This document shows positions 1,266-30,661 of a stretch of DNA of 64,000 nt, piece by piece. The first letter of the stretch is position 1, and each line of letters starts with the position of its first letter. The translations under genes were made by a program, and so were the position numbers. The stretch spans positions 95,542,001-95,606,000 of the forward strand of contig CM097883.1 of NCBI GenBank assembly GCA_044892505.1. The letters are read 5' to 3'. The notes below the pieces were generated by a model that ran no database searches, was not told the origin of the DNA, and saw only the letters and a program-made list of their open reading frames with translations. The DNA is from Schmidtea nova. Taxonomy: Eukaryota.

Positions 1266-1355
1266 GCGGTGGTTGAAAAATGATGGGCAGGTGAGCTTCA
1301 TCGCTGGAACTACTCCCCATTTATTTTCACGGGTTCCCGCTGCCGCTAGAAGGTC
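1266..1355 (+). other. Conserved structured motif, copy 1 (GTGAGC...TTCACGGGTT...TAGAAGG)
   Basis: Shares ordered blocks with 33900-34000, 54474-54570 and 55700-55795. Predicted stem tgaaaaatgatggg/ccccatttattttca; outer stem gcggtggt/gctgccgc. Confidence 0.6.
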
Positions 1356-2881: not shown

Positions 2882-3228
2882 TGTGAGAATATTGAAATTA
2901 AACAGTATTTAATTTTCAGTTTTTAATGGATATAATAAAATTAGATAATAAAATTATAAATTAGCATAGTAAATTAAATATAAATATTGAAGTTATTAAT
3001 TGGCTTGATTGTAAATTTCATATTTAAGAATAATTGAAAATTGAAAATATAAAATGTATATTGAATGCTTGTGTATGAATATTCCCTATTCAATTATTAA
3101 TTCTGCTTGCAAAAATAATATCCTCAAAGATAAAAAAAGAAATTGTTTTAATAATTACAGAAATTTTGTGTTGTTTTTAAAATATATCTTGAGAAATAAG
3201 GGATGTTCTTAATTTTCGAAACCAAACA
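2882..3228 (+). repeat. 5' LTR
   Basis: Begins tgtgagaata and ends aaaccaaaca; roughly 90-95% identical by eye to 10975-11318. Confidence 0.85.
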
Positions 3229-3234
3229 AATAAT

Positions 3235-3700
3235 ATGGCGACCACAATGGCCAATTTTATCAAGGCACCGGAAAATTTTGAGATGGTAACCAATGTCGAA
3301 GATTTTATAAAAGAAACAGAAAGATTTTTTGAATTAATGTCGATAGCTGAAGATTTTAAAGGAAGATTTGTCAAAGCTTTCTTATCAACGGATGCAATTA
3401 AAAATATGATCTTACCCATGAGGAAAAAAATTAAATGGATAGACTGAGAGGAGCCTTCAAAAAGCCAATGAATCTGATGGAAGACTTAAGTGAAGCGCTA
3501 GAATATAGACAAGGAGATGATTCCGCGGATGAATTCTGCGAAAAAATTGAGAAATTATCAAGAATTCTGAAACATGAATTTAATGAAGAAGAGCTCCAAA
3601 GATTTCTCATATTCAATGCAGTGGAAGACCAAGATTTGAAAAAGGATTTGAGATTAAATGAATATAAATCAGTGGATGAAATGAAAAAGAATCAAAAAAC
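3235..3700 (+). pseudogene. gag: Gag fragment, frameshifted near 3430
   Basis: MATTMANFIKAPENF...EDFIKETERFFEL... continues in another frame as YRQGDDSADEFCEKIEKL, typical of a retrotransposon gag capsid domain. Confidence 0.7.
3236..3245 (+). promoter_or_regulatory. Primer-binding site TGGCGACCAC (tRNA-Arg-type)
   Basis: Lies 7 nt after the LTR end and is complementary to the 3' end of metazoan tRNA-Arg(UCG) (...GUGGUCGCCA); overlaps the gag ATG at 3235. Confidence 0.65.
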
Positions 3701-6299: not shown

Positions 6300-6459
6300 T
6301 ACGTTTTGGTCAATAATAATAATTAAAATCATATATATTCGTATTTATATAGCGTATAAGGTTAAACCGACAATACGCCTTAAACAAAAATCTTTATCCT
6401 TTATTTTTAGAAAAGAATACACGAGCAAAACAAAGCAAGTTCCAACAAACTCCGAAAAC

Positions 6460-6700
6460 CCAATCAATCTCGTGAATTCTACACACCAATCAAATCATTG
6501 CGACAACCATTCAAAAATCTCAATAAATACAATCATCTCTTTTTTAAACTGTCACAACAAACAATCAAAAAACCCTACTAATTATCTCCATACAAAATAC
6601 CCAATCAATCTCGTCAATTCTATAAACCAATCGAATCGTTACGACAATTACCCATATATCTCAATATATTCAATTATATCTCTGTTAAACTGTCAAAACC
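6460..6700 (+). repeat. Imperfect ~140-bp direct duplication between ORF1 and ORF2
   Basis: ccaatcaatctcgtgaattctacacaccaatc... (about 6461) versus ccaatcaatctcgtcaattctataaaccaatc... (about 6601). Confidence 0.7.
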
Positions 6701-6762
6701 CTATTAATCATCTCTCAAATCAATATATCAAGAAATCAATTCGATACCAATCAAAAACAAAG

Positions 6763-11932: not shown

Positions 11933-14900
11933 TTAACATTCAATGGAATAATGTAATTGATGGCCATTCTTTTTCGAAAATTTGTAACGAGTATTTCTAT
12001 TATTGGTCCCATCAAATTGTTCTCCTTTATAAAATCTGCAAAAACAATTAATTTAAAAATATATTTTTAAAGTTTTACGTTTGATTTGAAACAAGATATA
12101 AATATTTCTTATATTTGTTGTTTGATTGTTTATCTTGTGTAACAAAAGCAGATGTAACATTTGGAATGGTCTCACCTCCGAAATTAATGAGTTCGCCCAC
12201 ACTGTGAATGCTGTCATGATACTCAGCAAAATCATTAGTTAGATAGATGTGTATAAGTTTATTATCCTGGAAACGTACGCTACATTTAAAAGCCGAGATA
12301 TATAAAAACATACCTTAATAGAATGTATCAGAGTGATTTTTCCAAAAATGAATCTCAAAAAGGCATTAGTAATTTTCCCAGGAGTTTTTTTCCATGAAAT
12401 GTATCTTACATTGGTAAAATTGCTGATATCGGGGCCACTACCAATCGTAATTATGTCATCTGAAAACATAGATATGAAATTATCAAATAAATAAAAAAAA
12501 ATACTTTTAAATGCAACTAATTCATTTCTATTCGGATCAAAGAATAATGAATCGGCATTCGAAAACCGTTTGTCTAATATAACAGCCTTGAAGCTAGAAT
12601 CAAGAGCAAAATCTTTCATTTTCAAAGCGTGATTTGAATCGGTCAATAGATATATAGAATCCAGATCTACAACGCGCACAATTTATATGATAGCACATAT
12701 AAAAATTTACAATTGAAAATAGTTTTAATTTTTTGAAGTCCACATTTATTTGGCAAATTTGTAACGGAAGTGGAATATCTGATTTGACCAGTCGTTAACG
12801 ACTGAGGCAATGTCGATTGAGTCCTTTTTGGGTCGGTTTTCACACCAGTTTTATTTTTATTGGAGACATTGTGATCAAAAATAGAATTTGGTTTATTTGT
12901 TGACAAAATTAAATGGTTAGTTTTCTCGTTTTCAAAATTAAATTCATCAAAAGAATCACAAGGAACTCTATAAAATTAATGACTTAAAATATTAGAAAAA
13001 TAAATATTACTTCATTATTTTATCTAAAGTTGTCCAGTTCGCAACATTAATCTCAAAAAATTCCTTCAAACGAGCAGAATTTTCAGCTACATAAATTCTA
13101 TTTACAAAATAAATAAATAAGTAAATCAAAATTTAATAGTTACTTTTCACCATCAACAAAATATAATTGTTTCTGTCCCAACGAATTAGTAGTAAATGTT
13201 GAATTTACATTGATACTGATGTTTTGATTATTAACATTACGAATAATATCATTAATATTATTAGCATGACTTGAAAATTGTACAGAATTTCCACGCAGAA
13301 TACCAGTAACAGCTTGATTGTTCTAATGAATCAAAATTTTTAAATTAGAAGATTATTTTTGAAATCCAACTTGAATTATCCACATCTTTGAATAATTTAT
13401 ATTTTTCTGCTGCGGACAAAATACAGCCTTAATTGGACCTTTAAATATTCCATTTGACTGAATTTTGAGTTCAGAAATTTTCAAATTGCTCAAATCAGAA
13501 CCAGACGCCGTAAATATTTTATCATCTGAAAAATTAAATCTCAATTTAATAATTTAATATTTTGTTATAAAATACTTTTAAAAAATATAATTTTTTGAAT
13601 TCGTTCGTCGAAAAACATTGAATCAGATTCAAAAACCTCTTTTGTCAATTTAATTGGTCTAAATGACCAATCGATTTCCCCAGTGGATAAAATTCGATAT
13701 ATCATTCCGTTACTTTTAGTAATAAATATTTGATGATTTATATCTAAATTACAAATGAATTATGGAAAATTATGTAATAAGTTACATACAGTTAAAAACT
13801 CTAAAAATATTGCAGTCAGAATGAATTAAATTATTATCTTTGGAATTTGGAATATTTATTATAACGTTGTTATTATTAACAGTATTGGAAGTATAAAATA
13901 AATTTCGATTTTTCTTCGAAACGGTAAAATTGTTTTTCTTTACATCATCAATAGTTCTGACAGCAAAAGTTTTTTTATCAATGCTAATTGTCTTATTCAA
14001 AACATGCAAAACTATTTTGCTATCCGAATTCTCGTCAACAGAAACTGAAGGATTTTGTTCACATCCACCGTCACTTCCACAACCTCCATTATAATGATTA
14101 TTAATATTCACATTAATAACATTTATTTGGCCGACTGCAGTGTTTACATTTGAAAAAGAATTGTTTGAAACATATGAAATATTATAGTAATTTTTATAAA
14201 TTGGACATTCAGGTTCATGGAAACATTTTGGAGGAGGACATGGGGGATTATTTGGAGGACGGTTTGGAGATGGTGGACAAGTACAAGGAACGTCAGATGA
14301 ATGATGAGAATGAGTTGTCAAATGGTGATCTTCAGTTGTCGAAGTGGCAAGTGTGGCAGTTCCAGTAGTTACACTTTCTGAAGCAGTGGATGATTGTTGA
14401 GTTTGTTCAGTGGTATTGATATCAGTTGAAACTTGTTCACTCGTTACTTTCGATGGTGAAGTGGTTTGTTCTTCAGTTATCGAAGTGGCAGGTGTGGCAG
14501 TTCCAGTAGTTACACTTTCTGAAGCAGTGGATGATTGTTGAGTTTGTTCAGTGGTATTGATATCAGTTGAAACTTGTTCACTTGTTACTTTCAATGGTGA
14601 AGTTGTTTGTTCTTCAGTTTTTGAAGTGGCAGGTGTGGCAGTTCCAGTAGTTACACTTTCTGAAGCAGTGGATGATTGATGAGTTTGTTCAGTGGTATTG
14701 ATATCAGTTGAAACTTGTTCACTAGTTACTTTCGATGGTGAAGTGGTTTGTTCTTCAGTTGTCGAAGTGGCAGGTGTTGCAGTTCCAGTAGTTAGACTTT
14801 CTGAAGCAGTGGATGATTGATGAGTTTGTTCAGTGGTATTGATATCAGTTGAAACTTGTTCACTAGTTACTTTCGATGATGAAGTGGTTTGTTCTTCAGT

Positions 14901-17900
14901 TGTCGAAGTGGCAGGTGTGGCAGTTCCAGTAGTTACACTTTCTGAAGCAGTGGATGATTGTTGAGTTTGTTCAGTGGTATTGATATCAGTAGAAACTTGT
15001 TCACTAGTTACTTTCGATGATGAAGTGGTTTGTTCTTCAGTTGTCGAAGTGGCAGGTGTGGCAGTTCCAGTAGTTACACTTTCTGAAGCAGTGGATGATT
15101 GTTGAGTTTGTTCAGTGGTATTGATATCAGTTGAAACTTGTTCACTAGTTACTTTCGATGATGAAGTGGTTTGTTCTTCAGTTTTTGAAGTGGCAGGTGT
15201 GGCAGTTCCAGTAGTTACACTTTCTGAAGCAGTGGATGATTGTTGAGTTTGTTCAGTGGTATTGATATCAGTTGAAACTTGTTCACTAGTTACTTTCGAT
15301 GATGAAGTTGTTTGTTCTTCAGTTGTCGAAGTGGCAGGTGTGGCAGTTCCAGTAGTTACACTTTCTGAAGCAGTGGATGATTGTTGAGTTTGTTCAGTGG
15401 TATTGATATCAGTTGAAACTTGTTCACTTGTTACTTTCGATGGTGAAGTGGTTTGTTCTTCAGTTGTCGAAGTGGCAGGTGTGGCAGTTCCAGTAGTTAC
15501 ACTTTCTGAAGCAGTGGATGATTGTTGAGTTTGTTCAGTGGTATTGATATCAGTTGAAACTTGTTCACTAGTTACTTTCGATGATGAAGTGGTTTGTTCT
15601 TCAGTTGTCGAAGTGGCAGGTGTGGCAGTTCCAGTAGTTACACTTTCTGAAGCAGTGGATGATTGTTGAGTTTGTTCAGTGGTATTGAAATCAGTTGAAA
15701 CTTGTTCACTAGTTACTTTCGATGATGAAGTGGTTTGTTCTTCAGTTGTCGAAGTGGCAGGTGTGGCAGTTCCAGTAGTTACACTTTCTGAAGCAGTGGA
15801 TGATTGTTGAGTTTGTTCAGTGGTATTGATATCAGTTGAAACTTGTTCACTTGTTACTTTCGATGGTGAAGTGGTTTGTTCTTCAGTTGTCGAAGTGGCA
15901 GGTGTGGCAGTTCCAGTAGTTACACTTTCTGAAGCAGTGGATGATTGTTGAGTTTGTTCAGTGGTATTGATATCAGTTGAAACTTGTTCACTTGTTACTT
16001 TCGATGGTGAAGTGGTTCGTTCTTCAGTTGTCGAAGTGGCAGGTGTGGCAGTTCCAGTAGTTACACTTTCTGAAGCAGTGGATGATTGTTGAGTTTGTCC
16101 AGTGGTATTGATATCACTAGAAACTTGTTCACTAGTTACTTTCGATGATGAAGTGGTTTGTTCTTCAGTTTTTGAAGTGGCAGGTGTGGCAGTTCCAGTA
16201 GTTACACTTTCTGAAGCAGTGGATGATTGTTGAGTTTGTTCAGTGGTATTGATATCAGTTGAAACTTGTTCACTAGTTACTTTCGATGATGAAGTGGTTT
16301 GTTCTTCAGTTTTTGAAGTGGCAGGTGTGGCAGTTCCAGTAGTTACACTTTCTGAAGCAGTGGATGATTGTTGAGTTTGTTCAGTGGTATTGATATCAGT
16401 TGAAACTTGTTCACTTGTTACTTTCAATGGTGAAGTTGTTTGTTCTTCAGTTGTCGAAGTGACAGGTGTGGCAGTTCCAGTAGTTACACTTTCTGAAGCA
16501 GTGGATGATTGTTGAGTTTGTTCAGTGGTATTGATATCAGTTGAAACTTGTTCACTAGTTACTTTCGATGATGAAGTGGTTTGTTCTTCAGTTTTTGAAG
16601 TGGCAGGTGTGGCAGTTCCAGTAGTTACACTTTCTGAAGCAGTGGATGATCGTTGAGTTTGTTCAGTGGTATTGATATCAGTTGAAACTTGTTCACTTGT
16701 TACTTTCGATTGTGAAGTGGTTTGTTCTTCAGTTTTTGAAGTGGCAGGTGTGGCAGTTCCAGTAGTTACACTTTCTGAAGCAGTGGATGATTGTTGAGTT
16801 TGTTCAGTAGTATTGATATCAGTTGAAACTTGTTCACTTGTTACTTTCAATGGTGAAGTTGTTTGTTCTTCAGTTTTTGAAGTGACAGGTGTGGCAGTTC
16901 CAGTAGTTACACTTTCTGAAGCAGTGGATGATTGTTGAGTTTGTTCAGTGGTATTGATATCAGTTGAAACTTGTTCACTTGTTACTTTCGATGGTGAAGT
17001 GGTTTGTTCTTCAGTTGTCGAAGTGGCAGGTGTGGCAGTTCCAGTAGTTACACTTTCTGAAGCAGTGGATGATTGTTGAGTTTGTTCAGTGGTATTGATA
17101 TCAGTTGAAACTTGTTCACTTGTTACTTTCGATGGTGAAGTGGTTTGTTCTTCAGTTGTCGAAGTGGCAGGTGTGGCAGTTCCAGTAGTTACACTTTCTG
17201 AAGCAGTGGATGATTGTTGAGTTTGTTCAGTGGTATTGATATCAGTTGAAACTTGTTCACTTGTTACTTTCGATGGTGAAGTGGTTCGTTCTTCAGTTGT
17301 CGAAGTGGCAGGTGTGGCAGTTCCAGTAGTTACACTTTCTGAAGCAGTGGATGATTGTTGAGTTTGTCCAGTGGTATTGATATCACTAGAAACTTGTTCA
17401 CTAGTTACTTTCGATGATGAAGTGGTTTGTTCTTCAGTTTTTGAAGTGGCAGGTGTGGCAGTTCCAGTAGTTACACTTTCTGAAGCAGTGGATGATTGTT
17501 GAGTTTGTTCAGTGGTATTGATATCAGTTGAAACTTGTTCACTAGTTACTTTCGATGATGAAGTGGTTTGTTCTTCAGTTTTTGAAGTGGCAGGTGTGGC
17601 AGTTCCAGTAGTTACACTTTCTGAAGCAGTGGATGATTGTTGAGTTTGTTCAGTGGTATTGATATCAGTTGAAACTTGTTCACTTGTTACTTTCAATGGT
17701 GAAGTTGTTTGTTCTTCAGTTGTCGAAGTGACAGGTGTGGCAGTTCCAGTAGTTACACTTTCTGAAGCAGTGGATGATTGTTGAGTTTGTTCAGTGGTAT
17801 TGATATCAGTTGAAACTTGTTCACTAGTTACTTTCGATGATGAAGTGGTTTGTTCTTCAGTTTTTGAAGTGGCAGGTGTGGCAGTTCCAGTAGTTACACT

Positions 17901-20900
17901 TTCTGAAGCAGTGGATGATCGTTGAGTTTGTTCAGTGGTATTGATATCAGTTGAAACTTGTTCACTTGTTACTTTCGATTGTGAAGTGGTTTGTTCTTCA
18001 GTTTTTGAAGTGGCAGGTGTGGCAGTTCCAGTAGTTACACTTTCTGAAGCAGTGGATGATTGTTGAGTTTGTTCAGTAGTATTGATATCAGTTGAAACTT
18101 GTTCACTTGTTACTTTCAATGGTGAAGTTGTTTGTTCTTCAGTTTTTGAAGTGACAGGTGTGGCAGTTCCAGTAGTTACACTTTCTGAAGCAGTGGATGA
18201 TTGTTGAGTTTGTTCAGTGGTATTGATATCAGTAGAAACTTGTTCACTTGTTACTTTCGATGATGAAGTGGTTTGTTCTTCAGTTTTTGAAGTGGCAGGT
18301 GTGGCAGTTCCAGTAGTTACACTTTCTGAAGCAGTGGATGATTGTTGAGTTTGTTCAGTGGTATTGATATCAGTTGAAACTTGTTCACTTGTTACTTTCG
18401 ATGATGAAGTGGTTTGTTCTTCAGTTTTTGAAGTGGCAGGTGTGGCAGTTCCAGTAGTTAGACTTTCTGAAGCAGTGGATGATTGTTGAGTTTGTTCAGT
18501 GGTATTGATATCAGTAGAAACTTGTTCACTAGTTACTTTCGATGATGAAGTGGTTTGTTCTTCAGTTTTTGAAGTGGCAGGTGTGGCAGTTCCAGTAGTT
18601 ACACTTTCTGAAGCAGTGGATGATTGTTGAGTTTGTTCAGTGGTATTGATATCAGTTGAAACTTGTTCACTTGTTACTTTCGATTGTGAAGTGGTTTGTT
18701 CTTCAGTTTTTGAAGTGGCAGGTGTGGCAGTTCCAGTAGTTACACTTTCTGAAGCAGTGGATGATTGTTGAGTTTGTTCAGTGGTATTGATATCAGTAGA
18801 AACTTGTTCACTTGTTACTTTCGATGATGAAGTGGTTTGTTCTTCAGTTTTTGAAGTGGCAGGTGTGGCAGTTCCAGTAGTTACACTTTCTGAAGCAGTG
18901 GATGATTGTTGAGTTTGTTCAGTAGTATTGATATCAGTTGAAACTTGTTCACTTGTTACTTTCGATGGTGAAGTGGTTTGTTCTACAGTTTTTGAAGTGT
19001 CAGGTGTGGCAGTTCCAGTAGTTACACTTTCTGAAGCAGTGGATGATTGTTGAGTTTGTTCAGTGGTATTGATATCAGTTGAAACTTGTTCACTTGTTAC
19101 TTTCGATGGTGAAGTGGTTTGTTCTTCAGTTTTTGAAGTGGCAGGTGTTGCAGTTCCAGTAGTTACACTTTCTGAAGCAGTGGATGATTGTTGAGTTTGT
19201 TCAGTGGTATTGATATCAGTTGAAACTTGTTCACTTGTTACTTTCAATGGTGAAGTTGTTTGTTCTTCAGTTTTTGAAGTGGCAGGTGTGGCAGTTCCAG
19301 TAGTTACACTTTCTGAAGCAGTGGATGATTGTTGAGTTTGTTCAGTGGTATTGAAATCAGTTGAAACTTGTTCACTAGTTACTTTCGATGATGAAGTGGT
19401 TTGTTCTTCAGTTGTCGAAGTGGCAGGTGTGGCAGTTCCAGTAGTTACACTTTCTGAAGCAGTGGATGATTGTTGAGTTTGTTCAGTGGTATTTATATCA
19501 GTAGAAACTTGTTCACTTGTTACTTTCGATGATGAAGTGGTTTGTTCAGTTGTCAAAGTCTCAGGTGTGGCAGTTCCAGTAGTTACACTTTCTGAAGCAG
19601 TGGATGATTGTTGAGTTTGTTCAGTGGTATTGATATCAGTAGAAACTTGTTCACTTGTTACTTTCGATGATGAAGTGGTTTGTTCTTCAGTTTTTGAAGT
19701 GACAGGTGTGGCATTTCCAGTAGTTACACTTTCTGAAGCAGTGGATGATTGTTGAGTTTGTTCAGTGGTATTGATATCAATTGAAACTTGTTCACTTGTT
19801 ACTTTCGATGATGAAGTGGTTTGTTCAGTTGTCGAAGTCTCAGGTGTGGCAGTTCCAGTAGTTACACTTTCTGAAGCAGTGGATGATTGTTGAGTTTGTT
19901 CAGTGGTATTGATATCAGTTGAAACTTGTTCACTTGTTACTTTCGATTGTGAAGTGGTTTGTTCTTCAGTTTTTGAAGTGGCAGGTGTGGCAGTTCCAGT
20001 AGTTACACTTTCTGAAGCAGTGGATGATTGTTGAGTTTGTTCAGTGGTATTGATATCAGTAGAAACTTGTTCACTTGTTACTTTCGATGATGAAGTGGTT
20101 TGTTCTTCAGTTTTTGAAGTGGCAGGTGTGGCAGTTCCAGTAGTTACACTTTCTGAAGCAGTGGATGATTGTTGAGTTTGTTCAGTGGTATTGATATCAG
20201 TTGAAACTTGTTCACTTGTTACTTTCGATGATGAAGTGGTTTGTTCTTCAGTTTTTGAAGTGGCAGGTGTGGCAGTTCCAGTAGTTACACTTTCTGAAGC
20301 AGTGGATGATTGTTGAGTTTGTTCAGTGGTATTGATATCAGTTGAAACTTGTTCACTTGTTACTTTCGATGGTGAAGTGGTTTGTTCTTCAGTTTTTGAA
20401 GTGGCAGGTGTTGCAGTTACAGTAGTTACACTTTCTGAAGCAGTGGATGATTGTTGAGTTTGTTCAGTGGTATTGATATCAGTTGAAACTTGTTCACTTG
20501 TTACTTTCGATGGTGAAGTGGTTTGTTCTTCAGTTGTCGAAGTGGCAGGTGTGGCAGTTCCAGTAGTTACACTTTCTGAAGCAGTGGATGATTGTTGAGT
20601 TTGTTCAGTGGTATTGATATCAGTAGAAACTTGTTCACTAGTTACTTTCGATGATGAAGTGGTTTGTTCTTCAGTTTTTGAAGTGGCAGGTGTGGCAGTT
20701 CCAGTAGTTACACTTTCTGAAGCAGTGGATGATTGTTGAGTTTGTTCAGTGGTATTGATATCAGTTGAAACTTGTTCACTTGTTACTTTCAATGGTGAAG
20801 TTGTTTGTTCTTCAGTTGTCGAAGTGGCAGGTGTGGCAGTTCCAGTAGTTACACTTTCTGAAGCAGTGGATGATTGTTGAGTTTGTTCAGTGGTATTGAT

Positions 20901-23900
20901 ATCAGTTGAAACTTGTTCACTTGTTACTTTCAATGGTGAAGTTGTTTGTTCTTCAGTTGTCGAAGTGGCAGGTGTGGCAGTTCCAGTAGTTACACTTTCT
21001 GAAGCAGTGGATGATTGTTGAGTTTGTTCAGTGGTATTGATATCAGTTGAAACTTGTTCACTTGTTACTTTCGATGGTGAAGTGGTTTGTTCTTCAGTTG
21101 TCGAAGTGGCAGGTGTGGCAGTTCCAGTAGTTACACTTTCTGAATCAGTGGATGATTGTTGAGTTTGTTCAGTGGTATTGATATCAGTAGAAACTTGTTC
21201 ACTAGTTACTTTCGATGATGAAGTGGTTTGTTCTTCAGTTTTTGAAGTGGCAGGTGTGGCAGTTCCAGTAGTTACACTTTCTGAAGCAGTGGATGATTGT
21301 TGAGTTTGTTCAGTGGTATTGATATCAGTTGAAACTTGTTCACTTGTTACTTTCGATTGTGAAGTGGTTTGTTCTTCAGTTTTTGAAGTGGCAGGTGTGG
21401 CAGTTCCAGTAGTTACACTTTCTGAAGCAGTGGATGATTGTTGAGTTTGTTCAGTGGTATTGATATCAGTTGAAACTTGTTCACTTGTTACTTTCAATGG
21501 TGAAGTTGTTTGTTCTTCAGTTGTCGAAGTGGCAGGTGTGGCAGTTCCAGTAGTTACACTTTCTGAAGCAGTGGATGATTGTTGAGTTTGTTCAGTGGTA
21601 TTGATATCAGTTGAAACTTGTTCACTTGTTACTTTCGATGGTGAAGTGGTTTGTTCTTCACTTGTCGAAGTGGCAGGTGTGGCAGTTCCATTAGTTACAC
21701 TTTCTGAAGCAGTGGATGATTGTTGAGTTTGTTCAGTGGTATTGATATCAGTAGAAACTTGTTCACTAGTTACTTTCGATGATGAAGTGGTTTGTTCTTC
21801 AGTTTTAGAAGTGGCAGGTGTGGCAGTTCCAGTAGTTACACTTTCTGAAGCAGTGGATGATTGTTGAGTTTGTTCAGTGGTATTGATATCAGTTGAAACT
21901 TGTTCACTTGTTACTTTCGATTGTGAAGTGGTTTGTTCTTCAGTTTTTGAAGTGGCAGGTGTGGCAGTTCCAGTAGTTACACTTTCTGAAGCAGTGGATG
22001 ATTGTTGAGTTTGTTCAGTGGTATTGATATCAGTAGAAACTTGTTCACTTGTTACTTTCGATGATGAAGTGGTTTGTTCTTCAGTTTTTGAAGTGGCAGG
22101 TGTGGCAGTTCCAGTAGTTACACTTTCTGAAGCAGTGGATGATTGTTGAGTTTGTTCAGTGGTATTGATATCAGTTGAAACTTGTTCACTTGTTACTTTC
22201 AATGGTGAAGTTGTTTGTTCTTCAGTTGTCGAAGTGGCAGGTGTGGCAGTTCCAGTAGTTACACTTTCTGAAGCAGTGGATGATTGTTGAGTTTGTTCAG
22301 TGGTATTGATATCAGTTGAAACTTGTTCACTTGTTACTTTCGATGGTGAAGTGGTTTGTTCTTCAGTTGTCGAAGTGGCAGGTGTGGCAGTTCCAGTAGT
22401 TACACTTTCTGAAGCAGTGGATGATTGTTGAGTTTGTTCAGTGGTATTGATATCAGTAGAAACTTGTTCACTTGTTACTTTCGATGATGAAGTGGTTTGT
22501 TCTTCAGTTTTTGAAGTGGCAGGTGTGGCAGTTCCAGTAGTTACACTTTCTGAAGCAGTGGATGATTGTTGAGTTTGTTCAGTGGTATTGATATCAGTTG
22601 AAACTTGTTCACTTGTTACTTTCGATGGTGAAGTGGTTTGTTCTTCAGTTGTCGAAGTGGCAGGTGTGGCAGTTCCAGTAGTTACACTTTCTGAAGCAGT
22701 GGATGATTGTTGAGTTTGTTCAGTGGTATTGATATCAGTAGAAACTTGTTCACTAGTTACTTTCGATGATGAAGTGGTTTGTTCTTCAGTTTTTGAAGTG
22801 GCAGGTGTGGCAGTTCCAGTAGTTACACTTTCTGAAGCAGTGGATGATTGTTGAGTTTGTTCAGTGGTATTGATATCAGTTGAAACTTGTTCACTTGTTA
22901 CTTTCGATTGTGAAGTGGTTTGTTCTTCAGTTTTTGAAGTGGCAGGTGTGGCAGTTCCAGTAGTTACACTTTCTGAAGCAGTGGATGATTGTTGAGTTTG
23001 TTCAGTGGTATTGATATCAGTTGAAACTTGTTCACTTGTTACTTTCAATGGTGAAGTTGTTTGTTCTTCAGTTGTCGAAGTGGCAGGTGTCGCAGTTCCA
23101 GTAGTTACACTTTCTGAAGCAGTGGATGATTGTTGAGTTTGTTCAGTGGTATTGATATCAGTTGAAACTTGTTCACTTGTTACTTTCGATGGTGAAGTGG
23201 TTTGTTCTTCAGTTGTCGAAGTGGCAGGTGTGGCAGTTCCAGTAGTTACACTTTCTGAAGCAGTGGATGATTGTTGAGTTTGTTCAGTGGTATTGATATC
23301 AGTAGAAACTTGTTCACTAGTTACTTTCGATGATGAAGTGGTTTGTTCTTCAGTTTTTGAAGTGGCAGGTGTGGCAGTTCCAGTAGTTACACTTTCTGAA
23401 GCAGTGGATGATTGTTGAGTTTGTTCAGTGGTATTGATATCAGTTGAAACTTGTTCACTTGTTACTTTCGATTGTGAAGTGGTTTGTTCTTCAGTTTTTG
23501 AAGTGGCAGGTGTGGCAGTTCCAGTAGTTACACTTTCTGAAGCAGTGGATGATTGTTGAGTTTGTTCAGTGGTATTGATATCAGTTGAAACTTGTTCACT
23601 TGTTACTTTCAATGGTGAAGTTGTTTGTTCTTCAGTTGTCGAAGTGGCAGGTGTGGCAGTTCCAGTAGTTACACTTTCTGAAGCAGTGGATGATTGTTGA
23701 GTTTGTTTAGTGGTATTGATATCAGTTGAAACTTGTTCACTTGTTACTTTCGATGGTGAAGTGGTTTGTTCTTCAGTTGTCGAAGTGGCAGGTGTGGCAG
23801 TTCCAGTAGTTACACTTTCTGAAGCAGTGGATGATTGTTGAGTTTGTTCAGTGGTATTGATATCAGTAGAAACTTGTTCACTTGTTACTTTCGATGATGA

Positions 23901-26900
23901 AGTGGTTTGTTCTTCAGTTTTTGAAGTGGCAGGTGTGGCAGTTCCAGTAGTTACACTTTCTGAAGCAGTGGATGATTGTTGAGTTTGTTCAGTGGTATTG
24001 ATATCAGTTGAAACTTGTTCACTTGTTACTTTCAATGGTGAAGTTGTTTGTTCTTCAGTTGTCGAAGTTGCAGGTGTGGCAGTTCCAGTAGTTACACTTT
24101 CTGAAGCAGTGGATGATTGTTGAGTTTGTTCAGTGGTATTGATATCAGTTGAAACTTGTTCACTTGTTACTTTCGATGGTGAAGTGGTTTGTTCTTCAGT
24201 TTGTGAAGTGGCAGGTGTTGCAGTTCCAGTAGTTACACTTTCTGAAGCAGTGGATGATTGTTGAGTTTGTTCAGTGGTATTGATATCAGTTGAAAGTTGT
24301 TCACTTGTTACTTTCGATTGTGAAGTGGTTTGTTCTTCAGTTTTTGAAGTGGCAGGTGTGGCAGTTCCAGTAGTTACACTTTCTGAAGCAGTGGATGATT
24401 GTTGAGTTTGTTCAGTGGTATTGATATCAGTTGAAACTTGTTCACTTGTTACTTTCGATGATGAAGTGGTTTGTTCTTCAGTTTTTGAAGTGGCAGGTGT
24501 GGTAGTTCCAGTAGTTACACTTTCTGAAGCAGTGGATGATTGTTGAGTTTGTTCAGTGGTATTTATATCAGTAGAAACTTGTTCACTTGTTACTTTCGAT
24601 GATGAAGTGGTTTGTTCTTCAGTTTTTGAAGTGACAGGTGTGGCATTTCCAGTAGTTACACTTTCTGAAGCAGTGGATGATTGTTGAGTTTGTTCAGTGG
24701 TATTGATATCAATTGAAACTTGTTCACTTGTTACTTTCGATGATGAAGTGGTTTGTTCAGTTGTCGAAGTCTCAGGTGTGGCAGTTCCAGTAGTTACACT
24801 TTCTGAAGCAGTGGATGATTTTTGAGTTTGTTCAGTGGTATTGATATCAGTTGAAACTTGTTCACTTGTTACTTTCGATTGTGAAGTGGTTTGTTCTTCA
24901 GTTTTTGAAGTGGCAGGTGTGGCAGTTCCAGTAGTTACACTTTCTGAAGCAGTGGATGATTGTTGAGTTTGTTCAGTGGTATTGATATCAGTAGAAACTT
25001 GTTCACTTGTTACTTTCGATGATGAAGTGGTTTGTTCTTCAGTTTTTGAAGTGGCAGGTGTGGCAGTTCCAGTAGTTACACTTTCTGAAGCAGTGGATGA
25101 TTGTTGAGTTTGTTCAGTGGTATTGATATCAGTTGAAACTTGTTCACTTGTTACTTTCAATGGTGAAGTTGTTTGTTCTTCAGTTGTCGAAGTGGCAGGT
25201 GTGGCAGTTCCAGTAGTTACACTTTCTGAAGCAGTGGATGATTGTTGAGTTTGTTCAGTGGTATTGATATCAGTTGAAACTTGTTCACTTGTTACTTTCG
25301 ATGGTGAAGTGGTTTGTTCTTCAGTTGTCGAAGTGGCAGGTGTGGCAGTTCCAGTAGTTACACTTTCTGAAGCAGTGGATGATTGTTGAGTTTGTTCAGT
25401 GGTATTGATATCAGTAGAAACTTGTTCACTTGTTACTTTCGATGATGAAGTGGTTTGTTCTTCAGTTTTTGAAGTGGCAGGTGTGGCAGTTCCAGTAGTT
25501 ACACTTTCTGAAGCAGTGGATGATTGTTGAGTTTGTTCAGTGGTATTGATATCAGTTGAAACTTGTTCACTTGTTACTTTCAATGGTGAAGTTGTTTGTT
25601 CTTCAGTTGTCGAAGTTGCAGGTGTGGCAGTTCCAGTAGTTACACTTTCTGAAGCAGTGGATGATTGTTGAGTTTGTTCAGTGGTATTGATATCAGTTGA
25701 AACTTGTTCACTTGTTACTTTCGATGGTGAAGTGGTTTGTTCTTCAGTTTGTGAAGTGGCAGGTGTTGCAGTTCCAGTAGTTACACTTTCTGAAGCAGTG
25801 GATGATTGTTGAGTTTGTTCAGTGGTATTGATATCAGTTGAAAGTTGTTCACTTGTTACTTTCGATTGTGAAGTGGTTTGTTCTTCAGTTTTTGAAGTGG
25901 CAGGTGTGGCAGTTCCAGTAGTTACACTTTCTGAAGCAGTGGATGATTGTTGAGTTTGTTCAGTGGTATTGATATCAGTTGAAACTTGTTCACTAGTTAC
26001 TTTCGATGATGAAGTGGTTTGTTCTTCAGTTTTTGAAGTGGCAGGTGTGGCAGTTCCAGTAGTTACACTTTCTGAAGCAGTGGATGATTGTTGAGTTTGT
26101 TCAGTGGTATTGATATCAGTTGAAACTTGTTCACTTGTTACTTTCGATGATGAAGTGGTTTGTTCTTCAGTTTTTGAAGTGGCAGGTGTGGTAGTTCCAG
26201 TAGTTACACTTTCTGAAGCAGTGGATGATTGTTGAGTTTGTTCAGTGGTATTTATATCAGTAGAAACTTGTTCACTTGTTACTTTCGATGATGAAGTGGT
26301 TTGTTCTTCAGTTTTTGAAGTGACAGGTGTGGCATTTCCAGTAGTTACACTTTCTGAAGCAGTGGATGATTGTTGAGTTTGTTCAGTGGTATTGATATCA
26401 ATTGAAACTTGTTCACTTGTTACTTTCGATGATGAAGTGGTTTGTTCAGTTGTCGAAGTCTCAGGTGTGGCAGTTCCAGTAGTTACACTTTCTGAAGCAG
26501 TGGATGATTGTTGAGTTTGTTCAGTGGTATTGATATCAGTAGAAACTTGTTCACTTGTTACTTTCGATGATGAAGTGGTTTGTTCTTCAGTTTTTGAAGT
26601 GGCAGGTGTGACAGTTCCAGTAGTTACACTTTCTGAAGCAGTGGATGATTGTTGAGTTTGTTCAGTGGTATTGATATCAGTTGAAACTTGTTCACTTGTT
26701 ACTTTCGATGATGAAGTTGTTTGTTCTTCAGTTGTCGAAGTGGCAGGTGTGGCAGTTCCAGTAGTTACACTTTCTGAAGCAGTGGATGATTGTTGAGTTT
26801 GTTCAGTGGTATTGATATCAGTTGAAACTTGTTCACTTGTTACTTTCGATGGTGAAGTGGTTTGTTCTTCAGTTTTTGAAGTGGCAGGTGTTGCAGTTCC

Positions 26901-29900
26901 AGTAGTTACACTTTCTGAAGCAGTGGATGATTGTTGAGTTTGTTCAGTGGTATTGATATCAGTTGAAACTTGTTCACTTGTTACTTTCAATGGTGAAGTT
27001 GTTTGTTCTTCAGTTGTCGAAGTGGCAGGTGTGGCAGTTCCAGTAGTTACACTTTCTGAAGCAGTGGATGATTGTTGAGTTTGTTCAGTGGTATTGATAT
27101 CAGTTGAAACTTGTTCACTTGTTACTTTCAATGGTGAAGTTGTTTGTTCTTCAGTTGTCGAAGTGGCAGGTGTGGCAGTTCCAGTAGTTACACTTTCTGA
27201 AGCAGTGGATGATTGTTGAGTTTGTTCAGTGGTATTGATATCAGTTGAAACTTGTTCACTTGTTACTTTCGATGATGAAGTGGTTTGTTCAGTTGTCGAA
27301 GTCTCAGGTGTGGCAGTTCCAGTAGTTACACTTTCTGAAGCAGTGGATGATTGTTGAGTTTGTTCAGTGGTATTGATATCAGTAGAAACTTGTTCACTTG
27401 TTACTTTCGATGATGAAGTGGTTTGTTCTTCAGTTTTTGAAGTGACAGGTGTGGCAGTTCCAGTAGTTACACTTTCTGAAGCAGTGGATGATTGTTGAGT
27501 TTGTTCAGTGGTATTGATATCAGTTGAAACTTGTTCACTTGTTACTTTCGATTGTGAAGTGGTTTGTTCTTCAGTTTTTGAAGTGGCAGGTGTGGCAGTT
27601 CCAGTAGTTACACTTTCTGAAGCAGTGGATGATTGTTGAGTTTGTTCAGTGGTATTGATATCAGTAGAAACTTGTTCACTTGTTACTTTCGATGATGAAG
27701 TGGTTTGTTCTTCAGTTTTTGAAGTGGCAGGTGTGGCAGTTCCAGTAGTTACACTTTCTGAAGCAGTGGATGATTGTTGAGTTTGTTCAGTGGTATTGAT
27801 ATCAGTTGAAACTTGTTCACTTGTTACTTTCGATGATGAAGTTGTTTGTTCTTCAGTTGTCGAAGTGGCAGGTGTGGCAGTTCCAGTAGTTACACTTTCT
27901 GAAGCAGTGGATGATTGTTGAGTTTGTTCAGTGGTATTGATATCAGTTGAAACTTGTTCACTTGTTACTTTCGATGGTGAAGTGGTTTGTTCTTCAGTTT
28001 TTGAAGTGGCAGGTGTTGCAGTTCCAGTAGTTACACTTTCTGAAGCAGTGGATGATTGTTGAGTTTGTTCAGTGGTATTGATATCAGTTGAAACTTGTTC
28101 ACTTGTTACTTTCAATGGTGAAGTTGTTTGTTCTTCAGTTGTCGAAGTGGCAGGTGTGGCAGTTCCAGTAGTTACACTTTCTGAAGCAGTGGATGATTGT
28201 TGAGTTTGTTCAGTGGTATTGATATCAGTTGAAACTTGTTCACTTGTTACTTTCAATGGTGAAGTTGTTTGTTCTTCAGTTGTCGAAGTGGCAGGTGTGG
28301 CAGTTCCAGTAGTTACACTTTCTGAAGCAGTGGATGATTGTTGAGTTTGTTCAGTGGTATTGATATCAGTTGAAACTTGTTCACTTGTTACTTTCGATGG
28401 TGAAGTGGTTTGTTCTTCAGTTTTTGAAGTGGCAGGTGTGGCAGTTCCAGTAGTTACACTTTCTGAAGCAGTGGATGATTGTTGAGTTTGTTCAGTGGTA
28501 TTGATATCAGTTGAAACTTGTTCACTTGTTACTTTCGATGATGAAGTGGTCTGTTCTTCAGTTGACGAAGTGGCAGGTGTGGGAGTTCCAGTAGTTATAC
28601 TTTCTGAAGCAGTGGATGATTGTTGAGTTTGTTCAGTGGTATTGATATCAGTTGAAACTTGTTCACTTGTTACTTTCGATGATGAAGTGGTTTGTTCTTC
28701 AGTTGACGAAGTGGCAGGTGTGGGAGTTCCAGTAGTTACACTTTCTGAAGCAGTGGATGATTGTTGAGTTTGTTCAGTGGTATTGATATCAGTTGAAACT
28801 TGTTCACTTGTTACTTTCGATGATGAAGTAGTTTGTTCTTCACTTTTTGAAGTGGCAGGAGTGGCAGTTCCAGTAGTTACACTTTCTGAAGCAGTGGATG
28901 ATTGTTGAGTTTGTTCAGTGGTATTGATATCAGTTGAAACTTGTTCACTTGTTACTTTCGATGATGAAGTAGTTTGTTCTTCACTTGTTGAAGTGGCAGG
29001 AGTGGCAGTTCCAGTAGTTACACTTTCTGAAGCAGTGGATATTTGTTGAGTTGTTTTGCTTTTTGGTTGATATTTTTTTGTCGTTATTTCAATTGATGAT
29101 TGAATTGGTTTCATAGTAGTTGTCTTTTCCTTTTCTTTTGTCGTTTTTATATTTTGTTTTACTGTTGTGGTTTTTTGAATTCTCTTTGTCGTACGTCTTA
29201 TTTGTGGTCTTCTGAAATCTTTTATTTTTCTTACTTTAGGTATTCTTTTTGGTATTTTGTTTATTGTAATGAATCCTCTAGTTACTTTTTGTGGTTTTGT
29301 TACTTTTTCTTTTGCTTTTACTTTTATTGTTTCATATATTATGTCTGTTACATCTCTATATGCTTCTCTGGTTCTATTGACCTGACGGACCCCTATAATA
29401 TAATCGTCTGTAACTGCTTTGTATTTTTCATAATCATGTATTAAGGATGTGTCGTTTCTATTACTATCTGGATTCCTTTCGAGTATTTCCTTCAATTCTT
29501 CATCTTCTAATTTCGTCATATTGCAAAAGCTGCAATTGTTCCTATTCAATATGTCTCGGGCAACATCATGTGCGGTTGGATTGTCGTATGTTTTGTTATT
29601 TGCAAATTTGTGCGAACGATATTCGTCAACAATATGCAATGGGAGTTTTTTTCCATTTTCTGCCAATATTACTTTTCTATGATTTTCAGGACCTGGGGTT
29701 CCTAATATGTCTGGCAATTTTATTATCTGAGTTGGCTTGTGAATGGGAGGTATTTCGAAAATTTTCGTAAAGATTTCATATTCGTCGTCGCTTATGTTTA
29801 ATTGTTTCATGATATCTTTTAAGATTTTCGCATATTCGGTGCTGTTTGAAATCTTCCAGAACATTACTTGCACGTTATCATTTGTTGAAATGTTGTTTGC

Positions 29901-30661
29901 TTTCGCATAAAGATACTTCACAAGTTCATTTTTTACGTGCTTTAGAAACTTCTGGTAATCTTCATTGTTATTTGTAAGATTCTTTGGTACGTCTATTTTT
30001 GGGAATTCAATATATACTGTCTTTCTTTGATTCGGGTTTATTACACCTAAACAATAAATTATTATATTTTTATTAATACATTTTCTACTCACCGTGCTTT
30101 TTCATTTCTCTGACAATGATCTTTTGCAGCCTTACTGTAATCTCAACTATTTCGTCGTATTTGGATTTGGATTTCTGTATTTTCATGTACAGTTTAATAT
30201 TCGATGCATCATTCGAATCAGAACTGTATATGATGTCACCTTGTTTTTTCAATTCATCGCCTATCCGTTTTCTAATTACTTCTCTAAGCAACCTGATTGT
30301 CTTTTCATCACTGAGCTTTCCAGATTTATTAATATAAAAGCTTAATTTTTTTAAGTCGACTTTTGGAGGTTCGCTTTTGATAAATCCTAAAGTTAGATTA
30401 ATTCTTTGTGAATTTGTGATGGGATTTATTTCCATACCTAAATTTTCCAATTCTTTATCAACAAGGTAAGTAATGATTTCCTTGATTTTCAAGTATTCCT
30501 TTTGCAATTTCACCTGTTCGACAGAATCTTGTCCTTGTATCTGACTGGCTGTGCCGTAAATACCTAAATACAAAAATGTTTAGAAATTTATAAGCTTTTC
30601 CCATCTGTGAATACTCACATAATATGAACCATGTTAAACCCAAAATTGTGGATTTATACAT
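11933..30661 (-). CDS. Giant secreted mucin with two C-terminal hemopexin-like modules (paralogue 1, ~6,050-6,100 aa, ~12 exons)
   Basis: Exon 1 30661-30619 + exon 2 30563-30093 give signal peptide MYKSTILGLTWFILCIYGTAS. Exon 3 30046-13790 is a stop-free 16.3-kb frame. Downstream exons 13743-13576, 13525-13371, 13322-~13142 etc. are separated by 45-56 bp GT-AG introns. Hemopexin-like DSMFFDERIQKIIFFK and ADSLFFDPNRNELVAFK; ends ...HYSIEC-stop at 11933. Confidence 0.85.
14335..29040 (-). repeat. Coding tandem array, 141-bp unit (47 aa: STASESVTTGTATPATSKTEEQTTSSSKVTSEQVSTDINTTEQTQQS), ~104 copies
   Basis: Period measured at 141 bp (gtggcag at 14353 and 14494); a few 138-bp units lack one Glu codon; frame preserved throughout. 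Confidence 0.97.

What the first reader, a model, noticed from the sequence alone, without database searches (positions are those of the whole stretch)
11933..30661. Invertebrate giant mucin with lubricin-like architecture (basic segment, mucin array, hemopexin-like C-terminus)
Seen: signal peptide, no TM segment, about 4,900 aa of Thr/Ser/Glu/Gln repeats with one N-T-T sequon per unit, then two modules that each start near a Cys, contain D-(A/S)-x-F/Y-(F/Y)-D/N...F-K/Q/S-G/N blades and end in Cys. There is no vWD, CysD or cystine-knot domain of gel-forming mucins and no metalloprotease domain. Established: vertebrate PRG4/lubricin combines a basic heparin-binding region, a mucin domain and a hemopexin domain that anchors it to surfaces. 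Inference: a convergent boundary lubricant or adhesive-mucus protein, present as a tandem gene family.
Basis: partly seen in the sequence, partly recalled or inferred. Interest (0 to 1): 0.8.

Follow-up and report, generated by a model that had tools for sequence, protein, structure and literature searches.

The report
Giant flatworm mucin with hemopexin ends
This is an intact 6,071-residue secreted mucin-type gene, probably from a planarian, whose tail carries two hemopexin-type propeller domains copied from the animal's own matrix metalloproteinases, a lubricin-like layout that arose independently; no RNA or protein data yet back it.

Summary
I built a 12-exon gene on the minus strand (30661 to 11933, all introns GT..AG, 43-55 bp). 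It encodes:
- a signal peptide;
- an orphan region of about 394 aa;
- a 92-aa basic segment (pI 11.2);
- 104-105 copies of a 47-aa Thr/Ser/Gln/Glu unit (about 4,900 aa, one N-T-T per unit);
- a conserved five-Cys proline-rich knot;
- two Cys-to-Cys modules of 208 and 210 aa.

Pfam does not recognise the modules. A search of 1.84 billion proteins links them to the C-terminal "tail" of planarian MMP1/MMP2 (E 1e-15 to 1e-17; profile comparison E 1e-38, 207 columns). The 2013 paper on those enzymes called this tail unannotated. The tail profile matches canonical hemopexin domains (95-97%). Its AlphaFold model (pLDDT 90.6) matches only hemopexin folds at the top (Z 14.5-18.1; the next fold scores 9.3).

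So the hemopexin reading is supported, by homology rather than by a direct fold of the mucin modules. On a tree the modules sit inside the planarian MMP1/2 tail lineage, so the likeness to lubricin is convergent.

Expression, glycosylation, secretion and function are untested; the four public runs that hold the stretch are DNA. The scan noted other giant mucins in this genome; a word search for "hemopexin" met no finding.

The parts
30619..30661 (-). Exon 1: start codon and most of the signal peptide (MYKSTILGLTWFIL...)
   Evidence: ATG at 30661 with a stop two codons upstream. Donor GTGAGTAT and a 55-bp intron to acceptor TTTTGTATTTAG. The hydrophobic core is the highest hydropathy peak of the protein.
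30093..30563 (-). Exon 2: end of the signal peptide plus the first part of the orphan N-terminal region
   Evidence: a 157-codon open exon in an AT-rich genome. Pfam and PDB sequence searches find nothing.
13790..30046 (-). Exon 3, the giant 16,257-bp exon. It holds the rest of the N-terminal region, the basic segment, the whole mucin array, the Cys/Pro knot, the Asn-rich spacer, and the first Cys and first strand of hemopexin module 1.
29040..29315 (-). Basic segment, aa 416-507: K 23%, R 9%, net charge +24, pI 11.2
14325..29039 (-). Mucin-like array: about 104.5 units of 47 aa (consensus STASESVTTGTATPATSKTEEQTTSSSKVTSEQVSTDINTTEQTQQS), net peptide charge -460
14196..14324 (-). Proline-rich five-Cys motif (CTCPPSPNRPPNNPPCPPPKCFHEPEC); the five Cys are conserved in the paralogue
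13821..14195 (-). Asn-rich spacer, 125 aa, no known domain
12958..13814 (-). Hemopexin-like module 1 (C5583-C5790). It begins in the giant exon and continues in exons 13743-13576, 13525-13371, 13322-13144, 13097-13011 and the start of 12967-12711.
12745..12957 (-). Linker of 71 aa between the two modules
   Evidence: Colinear with contig L001.
11933..12744 (-). Hemopexin-like module 2 (C5862-C6071, the last residue) and the stop codon. Exons: end of 12967-12711, then 12666-12505, 12459-12314, 12266-12079, 12035-11933.
60664..64000 (-). Paralogue (gene 2): same 141-bp repeat, running off the window
   Evidence: 23.7 copies, 98% matches. (97% DNA identity to the units of gene 1).
58056..60663 (-). 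Gene 2 C-terminus: five-Cys motif 60527-60625, module 1 at 59387-60217, module 2 at 58059-59335. Most of module 2 is one fused exon, 58192-58681.

Best explanation
Shown:
- One intact gene encodes a signal-peptide-bearing, TM-less protein of 6,071 aa.
- Its centre is a homogenised array of about 4,900 aa, half Ser/Thr, acidic.
- Its C-terminus carries two complete Cys-bracketed domains. These are homologous to the C-terminal domain of planarian MMP1/MMP2, and that domain is a divergent four-bladed hemopexin propeller.

Inferred:
- The array is densely O-glycosylated and forms an extended, hydrated polyanionic brush about 1.2 micrometres long.
- The odd-numbered Cys/Pro knot makes interchain disulfides.
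- The two hemopexin domains act as protein- or matrix-binding (or self-associating) anchors, as such domains do in MMPs, vitronectin and lubricin.
- The N-terminal basic patch binds polyanions such as the sulphated glycosaminoglycans of planarian slime.

Together this would give an end-anchored or cross-linked mucus polymer of the body-surface slime (lubrication and/or adhesion). The animal would have built it by capturing a hemopexin domain from an MMP gene, duplicating it in tandem, and then duplicating the whole gene.
For: - Gene integrity: a 5,436-codon open frame and unique GT..AG solutions with 43-55-bp introns.
- Coupling of mucin and module 1: the first Cys and first strand of module 1 lie inside the giant exon, in frame with the repeats, in both paralogues.
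- Intron positions are conserved between modules and between paralogues.
- An environmental contig, L001, carries the same exons in the same order. DNA similarity is confined to the exons and dN/dS is about 0.3.
- Homology to MMP tails: phmmer against 1.84e9 proteins hits Smed-MMP1 and an MMP fragment at E 1.3e-15 and 1.1e-17. hhalign of the spliced modules against the MMP1/2 tails gives 100%, E 1e-38 over 207 columns, with both Cys aligned.
- The tail is a hemopexin domain. BLASTP to P0009 gives 5e-26, and P0009 passes Pfam's Hemopexin cutoff. An in-register match to a Drosophila MMP hemopexin domain gives 1e-4. hhalign to 11 canonical domains gives 95.5-97.5%. AlphaFold gives pLDDT 90.6, pTM 0.88. 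Foldseek's top 28 hits are almost all hemopexin folds. VIA-align gives Z 14.5-18.1 for 11 hemopexin chains against 9.3 for the next fold.
- Origin: the mucin modules form a clade (92/92) inside the planarian tail clade (95/96), with canonical domains outside it (100/100).
- Context: MMP1/2 are made by cyanophilic secretory cells (PMC3566077). Planarian slime is rich in sulphated GAGs and has to stay on the animal while lubricating (PMC5450325). Lubricin has the same order of parts (PMC7060204).
Against: - No RNA, protein or glycan evidence; the only runs holding the locus are DNA.
- The mucin modules alone do not reach significance against canonical hemopexin domains (hhalign 15.6%, E 0.0017) or against Pfam, so the fold assignment is transitive.
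- The one direct AlphaFold attempt was uninformative (pLDDT 38).
- The array is proline-poor (3%) and rich in Gln/Glu, unlike classical PTS domains, so dense O-glycosylation is an assumption.
- The Asp of the DAA-type motif is kept in only one of the four blades of the mucin modules, so ion or ligand binding may differ.
- The ligand of the domains and the gland cell of origin are unknown.
Confidence: 0.6

Rival explanations
1. The protein is a glue rather than a lubricant. It would be a component of temporary-adhesion or prey-capture secretions, with the basic segment and hemopexin domains as the sticky ends and the glycosylated array as the cohesive thread.
For: It has the same anatomy as the best explanation. 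Planarian slime contributes to adhesion as well as to lubrication (PMC5450325). Giant repetitive secreted proteins are the rule in flatworm adhesives (from my own knowledge of Macrostomum adhesive proteins; not checked here).
Against: No lectin, vWD, TSP or EGF domains of the kind I recall from flatworm adhesive proteins were found by Pfam. An array with net charge -460 suits hydration and repulsion more than adhesion. Nothing in the sequence discriminates the two roles.
Confidence: 0.2
2. The hemopexin modules work mainly in protease biology. They could dock MMP1/MMP2, secreted by gland cells, onto the mucin by hemopexin-hemopexin association. Or they could compete with those enzymes for the same substrates or inhibitors, making the mucin a protease scaffold or decoy.
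For: The modules are derived from the MMP1/2 tail lineage and still align end to end with it. MMP1/2 are strongly expressed in secretory cells. The PDB entry title for 1itv records a dimeric hemopexin domain of MMP9.
Against: Identity to the MMP tails is only about 20-35% with long branches, so shared ligands are not assured. Co-expression is unknown. No interaction data exist.
Confidence: 0.13
3. The gene model is an artefact or the gene is dead. The hemopexin exons would be relics of a degraded MMP gene lying downstream of a repeat-filled open frame, and no such fusion protein would be made.
For: There is no RNA evidence. The upstream exons 1-2 are supported only by open frames and splice consensus.
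Against: Module 1 starts inside the giant exon, in frame, in both paralogues. No stop or frameshift occurs in any of 12 exons. Four modules keep both Cys and the blade pattern. An independent contig keeps the exon order with dN/dS about 0.3 and diverged introns. No catalytic-domain remnant or HExxH is present.
Confidence: 0.07

Closest known systems
Vertebrate lubricin / proteoglycan 4 (PRG4)
   Same: A secreted protein without a TM segment. It has a basic glycosaminoglycan-binding-type segment, a long central Ser/Thr-rich mucin domain and a hemopexin-type domain at the C-terminus (PMC7060204).
   Different: - No somatomedin-B domains.
- Two complete hemopexin domains instead of one.
- The array is about five times longer (my estimate; PRG4's length is from memory), proline-poor and Gln/Glu-rich, whereas lubricin's mucin domain is Pro/Thr-rich.
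- The hemopexin domains descend from the planarian MMP1/2 lineage, so the likeness is convergent, not orthology.
C-terminal 'tail' of planarian MMP1 and MMP2 (Schmidtea mediterranea K0JBS3 and K0JBI8; Dugesia japonica orthologues)
   Same: This is the closest sequence relative of the modules. The match is full length, with both bracketing Cys and four blade motifs. It is the lineage from which the mucin modules branch.
   Different: [quoted passage not shown] Here it follows a mucin array, is present twice, and no protease part exists. The 2013 description found no annotated domain in the tail; here it is shown to be a divergent hemopexin domain.
Canonical hemopexin-like domains (Pfam PF00045 repeats; MMP-14, MMP-9, MMP-2, vitronectin, hemopexin)
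   Same: A four-bladed propeller of about 200 aa closed by a Cys-Cys pair. These are the fold matches of the homologous MMP1 tail, at Z 14.5-18.1 and TM 0.66-0.71.
   Different: Sequence identity to the tail is only 11-19% in the listed structural alignments. No exon of the mucin reaches any Pfam hit. The DAA-type Asp is kept in only one blade of the mucin modules.
Gel-forming and membrane-tethered mucins (MUC2/MUC5 type; MUC1/MUC16 type), and the other giant mucins the scan noted in this genome
   Same: A giant single-exon, homogenised Ser/Thr-rich tandem array in a secreted protein.
   Different: No vWD/C8/TIL assemblies, CysD, cystine knot, SEA or TM segment. Earlier notes on this genome describe SEA-linked and discoidin-bead mucins. 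A word search for 'hemopexin' met no finding.

Membership tests
Hemopexin-like domain (hemopexin fold) | About 200-aa domain bracketed by a Cys at each end (disulfide joining blades 1 and 4) | tested here: met
   All four modules: C5583-C5790 and C5862-C6071 in gene 1; 199 and 205 aa in gene 2. Both Cys align with those of the MMP tails. The disulfide itself is inferred.
Hemopexin-like domain (hemopexin fold) | Four-bladed beta-propeller structure | tested here: inconclusive
   Met for the homologous Smed-MMP1 tail: pLDDT 90.6, with top PDB matches all hemopexin folds at Z 14.5-18.1. For the mucin module itself only a low-confidence single-sequence model exists (pLDDT 38). Its 11 strands coincide with strands of the tail model. 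The fold is assigned by homology (E 1e-38).
Hemopexin-like domain (hemopexin fold) | Sequence match to Pfam PF00045 at the curated cutoff | tested here: not met
   No hit at E<=1 on any mucin exon. The tails are sub-threshold (18 bits and 10.3 bits against 21.3). Only the bridging protein P0009 passes (24.6 bits).
Hemopexin-like domain (hemopexin fold) | Profile-profile homology to canonical hemopexin domains | tested here: met
   Joint profile (tails plus mucin exons) against 11 canonical domains: 97.5%, E 5.4e-12. Tails alone: 95.5%, E 1.3e-8. Mucin modules alone: only 15.6%, E 0.0017. The link is therefore transitive, through the MMP tails.
Lubricin / PRG4 orthologue | Two N-terminal somatomedin-B domains | tested here: not met
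   No Pfam hit in the N-terminal 540 aa; only two Cys in the mature N-terminal region.
Lubricin / PRG4 orthologue | Hemopexin domain sharing descent with the vitronectin/PRG4 domain rather than acquired separately | tested here: not met
   The modules nest in the planarian MMP1/2 tail clade (95/96), with canonical MMP domains outside (100/100). PRG4 and vitronectin sequences themselves were not in the tree.
Lubricin / PRG4 orthologue | Central O-glycosylated mucin domain flanked by a basic binding region | tested here: inconclusive
   The Ser/Thr-rich array and a +24 basic segment are present. Glycosylation and binding cannot be tested from sequence.
Gel-forming mucins | vWD-C8-TIL assemblies and a C-terminal cystine knot | tested here: not met
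   Pfam on all non-repeat parts found none.
Membrane-tethered mucins | SEA domain and transmembrane segment | tested here: not met
   No SEA hit. No hydrophobic 19-mer above 1.2 outside the signal peptide.
Matrix metalloproteinases (peptidase M10) | Pro-domain cysteine switch and HExxHxxGxxH catalytic domain | tested here: not met
   No Peptidase_M10 hit and no HExxH anywhere in the 6,071 aa.

The most novel reading that the evidence does not exclude
Planarians may have invented a mucin assembly and anchoring system that does not use vWD or cystine-knot domains. A hemopexin domain would have been lifted from a gland-cell MMP gene, doubled, and fused behind a micrometre-long glycan brush and a disulfide knot. 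The hemopexin pair would then anchor or cross-link the slime. Because it shares ancestry with the MMP1/MMP2 tails, it could also dock those secreted proteases onto the mucus. That would couple lubrication or adhesion with matrix remodelling.
Probability: 0.2. Interest if true: 0.75.

Novelty: new variant of a known kind. Interest (0 to 1): 0.6.

Why it matters
- It gives a concrete, testable candidate for how planarian slime stays attached to the animal while lubricating. A 2017 paper states this as an open question (PMC5450325).
- It would be an invertebrate counterpart of the lubricin layout (mucin brush plus hemopexin anchor) that arose by independent domain capture. The full-text searches run here found no paper describing a flatworm mucin with hemopexin domains.
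- It resolves the 'unusual long C-terminal tail' of planarian MMP1/MMP2 as a cryptic hemopexin domain. Those enzymes would therefore not be minimal, matrilysin-type MMPs as described in 2013.
- It shows that Pfam-based matrisome surveys can miss this domain lineage entirely.

Tried and rejected
- Pfam on ten in-frame exon pieces: no hemopexin or any other credible hit.
- PDB sequence searches found nothing relevant. I tried the 167-aa module exon, a family profile and the N-terminal and spacer parts.
- The search for homologous proteins with the 167-aa exon: blank, because of its length window.
- The same tool with the MMP1 tail region found only Smed- and Dj-MMP1.
- Single-sequence AlphaFold of the mucin exon: pLDDT 38, unusable for fold search.
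- Spliced modules have no reference, so they could not be given to structure prediction, Pfam or the big searches. They were analysed only inside scripts.
- The MAFFT alignment of exon fragments alone put the third exons on the first blades (A1). That alignment was dropped, although the slip itself shows the internal repeat.
- RNA evidence: the look-up of sequencing runs listed no RNA holder. The four runs laid are DNA contigs colinear with the introns. The one 'joint' reported carries foreign letters and I took it for a paralogue.
- Repeat depth in those runs is not a copy number by the tool's own caveat, so I did not use it.
- Word searches of the scan's notes for hemopexin, metalloproteinase, propeller and lubricin met nothing.
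- Rfam on the whole window: nothing.
- Rejected readings: an MMP gene (no catalytic part), a gel-forming or membrane mucin (no defining domains), and a PRG4 orthologue (no SMB; domain of MMP1/2 descent).
- N runs in the window were left untouched.
Full report
**What is in the sequence**

On the minus strand an open frame of 5,436 codons runs from 30092 to 13782. Most of it is a 141-bp tandem repeat: 104.5 copies at 14329-29052, 96% matches, no indels. Translated, this gives 104 units of 47 aa with consensus STASESVTTGTATPATSKTEEQTTSSSKVTSEQVSTDINTTEQTQQS. The composition is T 30%, S 20%, Q 11%, E 10.5%, and P only 3%. There is one N-T-T sequon per unit, 108 in the array. The same repeat starts again at 60664 and runs off the window, so a second paralogue lies on the same strand.

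**Gene model**

I enumerated every GT..AG intron that keeps the frames open between the coding-looking pieces. Nearly every junction had a single clean solution with a 43-55-bp intron and good consensus. The model has 12 exons:

| Exon | Window coordinates |
|---|---|
| 1 | 30661-30619 |
| 2 | 30563-30093 |
| 3 (giant) | 30046-13790 |
| 4 | 13743-13576 |
| 5 | 13525-13371 |
| 6 | 13322-13144 |
| 7 | 13097-13011 |
| 8 | 12967-12711 |
| 9 | 12666-12505 |
| 10 | 12459-12314 |
| 11 | 12266-12079 |
| 12 | 12035-11933 |

The protein reads as follows:

| Residues | Part | Notes |
|---|---|---|
| 1-21 | Signal-peptide-like start | MYKSTILGLTWFILCIYGTAS/Q |
| 22-415 | Orphan region | Lys/Ile/Asn-rich |
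| 416-507 | Basic segment | net +24, pI 11.2 |
| 508-5412 | Mucin array | net peptide charge -460 |
| 5413-5455 | Pro-rich five-Cys motif | |
| 5456-5580 | Asn-rich spacer | |
| C5583-C5790 | Module 1 | |
| 5791-5861 | Linker | 71 aa |
| C5862-C6071 | Module 2 | ends the protein |

No TM-grade hydrophobic stretch exists outside the signal peptide. There is no HExxH motif.

**Is it one gene, and is it alive?**

No RNA data could be had. The only public runs holding the stretch are DNA contigs colinear with the introns. The case therefore rests on structure and conservation:

- The first Cys and first strand of module 1 are encoded inside the giant exon, in frame with the repeats, and are followed at once by a donor site. 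The paralogue has the same arrangement. This ties the mucin array and the modules into one reading frame.
- Intron positions recur between module 1 and module 2 and between the two genes. In gene 2, module 2 has lost two introns and sits mostly in one 490-bp exon.
- An environmental contig, L001 (997 bp, a JGI metagenome), carries the same exons in the same order: the end of module 1, the linker and the start of module 2. Nucleotide similarity there is detectable only in the exons. Protein identity is 41-68% and dN/dS is about 0.3 overall and 0.10 for the first exon of module 2. dS is near saturation, so these ratios are rough.

**What the C-terminal modules are**

Pfam finds nothing on any exon, and PDB sequence searches are blank. 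An exhaustive phmmer search with the single-exon module of gene 2 against 1.84 billion representatives gave four relevant hits (a fifth listed hit, P0003, is an unrelated repetitive protein):

- an MMP fragment, P0001 (E 1.1e-17);
- Schmidtea mediterranea Mmp1, P0002 / K0JBS3 (E 1.3e-15, matching its residues 299-458);
- two small fragments.

The matched part of Mmp1 lies after the catalytic domain. [quoted passage not shown]

A further search added Dugesia MMP1, both MMP2s and P0009. P0009 is a 495-aa MMP whose C-terminal domain matches the Mmp1 tail over its whole Cys-to-Cys length (BLASTP 5e-26). P0009 passes Pfam's Hemopexin cutoff (24.6 bits against 21.3).

The Mmp1 tail also aligns in register, from the first Cys, with the hemopexin domain of a Drosophila MMP (1e-4). 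The profile-profile comparisons were:

| Query profile | Target | Result |
|---|---|---|
| Tails plus mucin exons | 11 canonical hemopexin domains | 97.5%, E 5.4e-12 |
| Tails alone, without P0009 | same | 95.5%, E 1.3e-8 |
| Spliced mucin modules | MMP1/2 tails | 100%, E 1e-38 over 207 columns, both Cys aligned |
| Spliced mucin modules alone | canonical domains | 15.6%, E 0.0017 |

The assignment of the mucin modules to the hemopexin family is therefore transitive, through the MMP tails.

**Structure**

AlphaFold2 of the Mmp1 tail (P0002:285-495) used only family members in the alignment. No canonical hemopexin domains were included apart from the borderline P0009. It gave mean pLDDT 90.6 and pTM 0.88, an essentially all-beta fold.

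- Foldseek against the PDB returned hemopexin folds in almost all of the top 28 rows: MMP-14 3c7x at E 1.4e-9 and TM 0.66/0.71, then vitronectin, hemopexin, MMP-9, MMP-1, MMP-2 and the plant hemopexin-fold albumins.
- A search independent of Foldseek gave Z 14.5-18.1 (rmsd 2.6-3.6 Å, 164-189 residues) for eleven hemopexin-fold chains. The next fold scored Z 9.3.
- The only direct attempt on a mucin module, without an alignment, gave pLDDT 38 and is unusable. Its 11 predicted strands do coincide with strands of the tail model at 56 of 62 positions, which is weak support.
- Spliced module sequences have no reference, so they could not be handed to the prediction tool.

**Origin**

In a maximum-likelihood tree of 20 domains:

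- Canonical MMP hemopexin domains are separated from the planarian-type domains at 100/100.
- P0009 branches first.
- The MMP1/2 tails plus the mucin modules form a clade at 95/96.
- The four mucin modules form a clade at 92/92. It is placed next to MMP2 and P0001 at 89/89, which I treat as unresolved.
- Module 1 of gene 1 pairs with module 1 of gene 2, and module 2 with module 2 (99/97 each).

The most economical history is therefore that a hemopexin domain of the planarian MMP1/2 type was captured by a mucin gene, doubled in tandem, and then the whole gene was duplicated. This makes the resemblance to lubricin convergent. Lubricin has two SMB domains, a heparin- or chondroitin-binding region, a Pro/Thr-rich mucin domain and one hemopexin domain (PMC7060204). 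Here there are no SMB domains, two hemopexin domains, and a proline-poor array about five times longer (my estimate).

**How it most likely works**

Shown: the domain order and the homologies above. The rest is inferred.

- An array that is half Ser/Thr is expected to be densely O-glycosylated and extended, about 1.2 micrometres at about 0.25 nm per residue. It would be strongly anionic and hydrated.
- The five conserved Cys in a proline-rich stretch are an odd number, which suggests at least one interchain disulfide.
- From established knowledge of hemopexin domains in MMPs, vitronectin and lubricin, and from the PDB titles (dimeric MMP-9 domain; collagen binding by the MMP-14 domain), these domains are ligand-binding and self-associating modules.
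- A +24 basic patch could hold sulphated GAGs, which are abundant in planarian slime (PMC5450325).

Together this predicts an end-anchored or cross-linked brush polymer of the surface slime. Sequence alone cannot decide between lubrication and adhesion. A role as a scaffold or decoy for the related MMP1/2 enzymes is a live alternative.

**Caveats**

- Expression, secretion, glycosylation and function are all untested.
- Exons 1 and 2 rest on open frames and splice consensus only, and gene 2 gives no check because its 5' end is outside the window.
- The Asp of the DAA-type blade motif survives in only one blade of the mucin modules, so their ligand chemistry may differ from that of canonical domains.
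The nearest relatives of the modules are triclad planarian proteins, which agrees with earlier notes of the scan.

**Verdict**

The hemopexin nature of the modules (by strong homology to a domain now shown to be a hemopexin propeller), the lubricin-like order of parts and the convergence all hold. The function remains a hypothesis. I class this as a new variant of a known kind (a secreted mucin), with a domain combination that the paper searches run here did not find described in flatworms. A by-product is that the planarian MMP1/MMP2 'tail' is a cryptic hemopexin domain.

Noticed in passing
P0002:285-495 (Smed-MMP1), P0007:286-502 (Smed-MMP2), P0006, P0008: A 2013 paper described the 'unusual long C-terminal tail' of planarian MMP1/MMP2 as having no annotated domain. 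It is a complete Cys-bracketed hemopexin propeller (pLDDT 90.6; Z up to 18.1 to PDB hemopexin domains), so these enzymes are not minimal matrilysin-type MMPs.
   Followed up: yes
window 14329-29052 versus 60664-64000: Repeat units of the two paralogues are 97% identical in DNA (97% within gene 1, 99% within gene 2; the consensus units differ at 4 of 141 bases). Their hemopexin modules have diverged to blastp-level identities of about 27-43% in protein, so the arrays are being homogenised between genes.
   Followed up: partly
window 58192-58681 and 58682-59301: In gene 2, module 2 has lost the two internal introns that the other three modules keep, giving one 490-bp exon. It is preceded by an unusually long 620-bp intron, where all other introns are 42-55 bp.
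   Followed up: partly
L001:1-997 (JGI metagenome 3300031718): This environmental genomic contig carries an orthologue-like copy of the module 1 end, linker and module 2 start. Exon order and boundaries are the same and the introns have diverged. A relative of the source animal was therefore sampled in a metagenome.
   Followed up: yes
window 14196-14324 and 60527-60625: A proline-rich motif with five Cys (C-x-C, then three more Cys 4-16 residues apart) is conserved between the paralogues directly after the mucin array. It is a candidate interchain disulfide knot. Gene 1 has an extra GGCGSDGGC pair downstream.
   Followed up: no
window 3435-6299 (+): This long ORF has RT-RNase H and integrase domains (Pfam RT_RNaseH_2 2.8e-38, Integrase_H2C2, rve), so it is an LTR-retrotransposon pol. 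The following 876-aa ORF (6232-8862) has no Pfam hit.
   Followed up: partly
window 39166-40015 (-): Two adjacent ORFs show, by eye, an RT-like YIDDIF motif and a GIY-YIG-like '...ATYIGETQ' motif. This may be a Penelope-like retroelement between the two mucin genes. It was not tested with any profile at that motif.
   Followed up: no
window 14313-14400 in runs X1-X4: Summed contig depth over the repeat edge is hundreds of times the flanking single-copy depth in all four DNA runs. The tool warns that this is not a copy number, but it hints at more copies of this repeat elsewhere in the genome.
   Followed up: no
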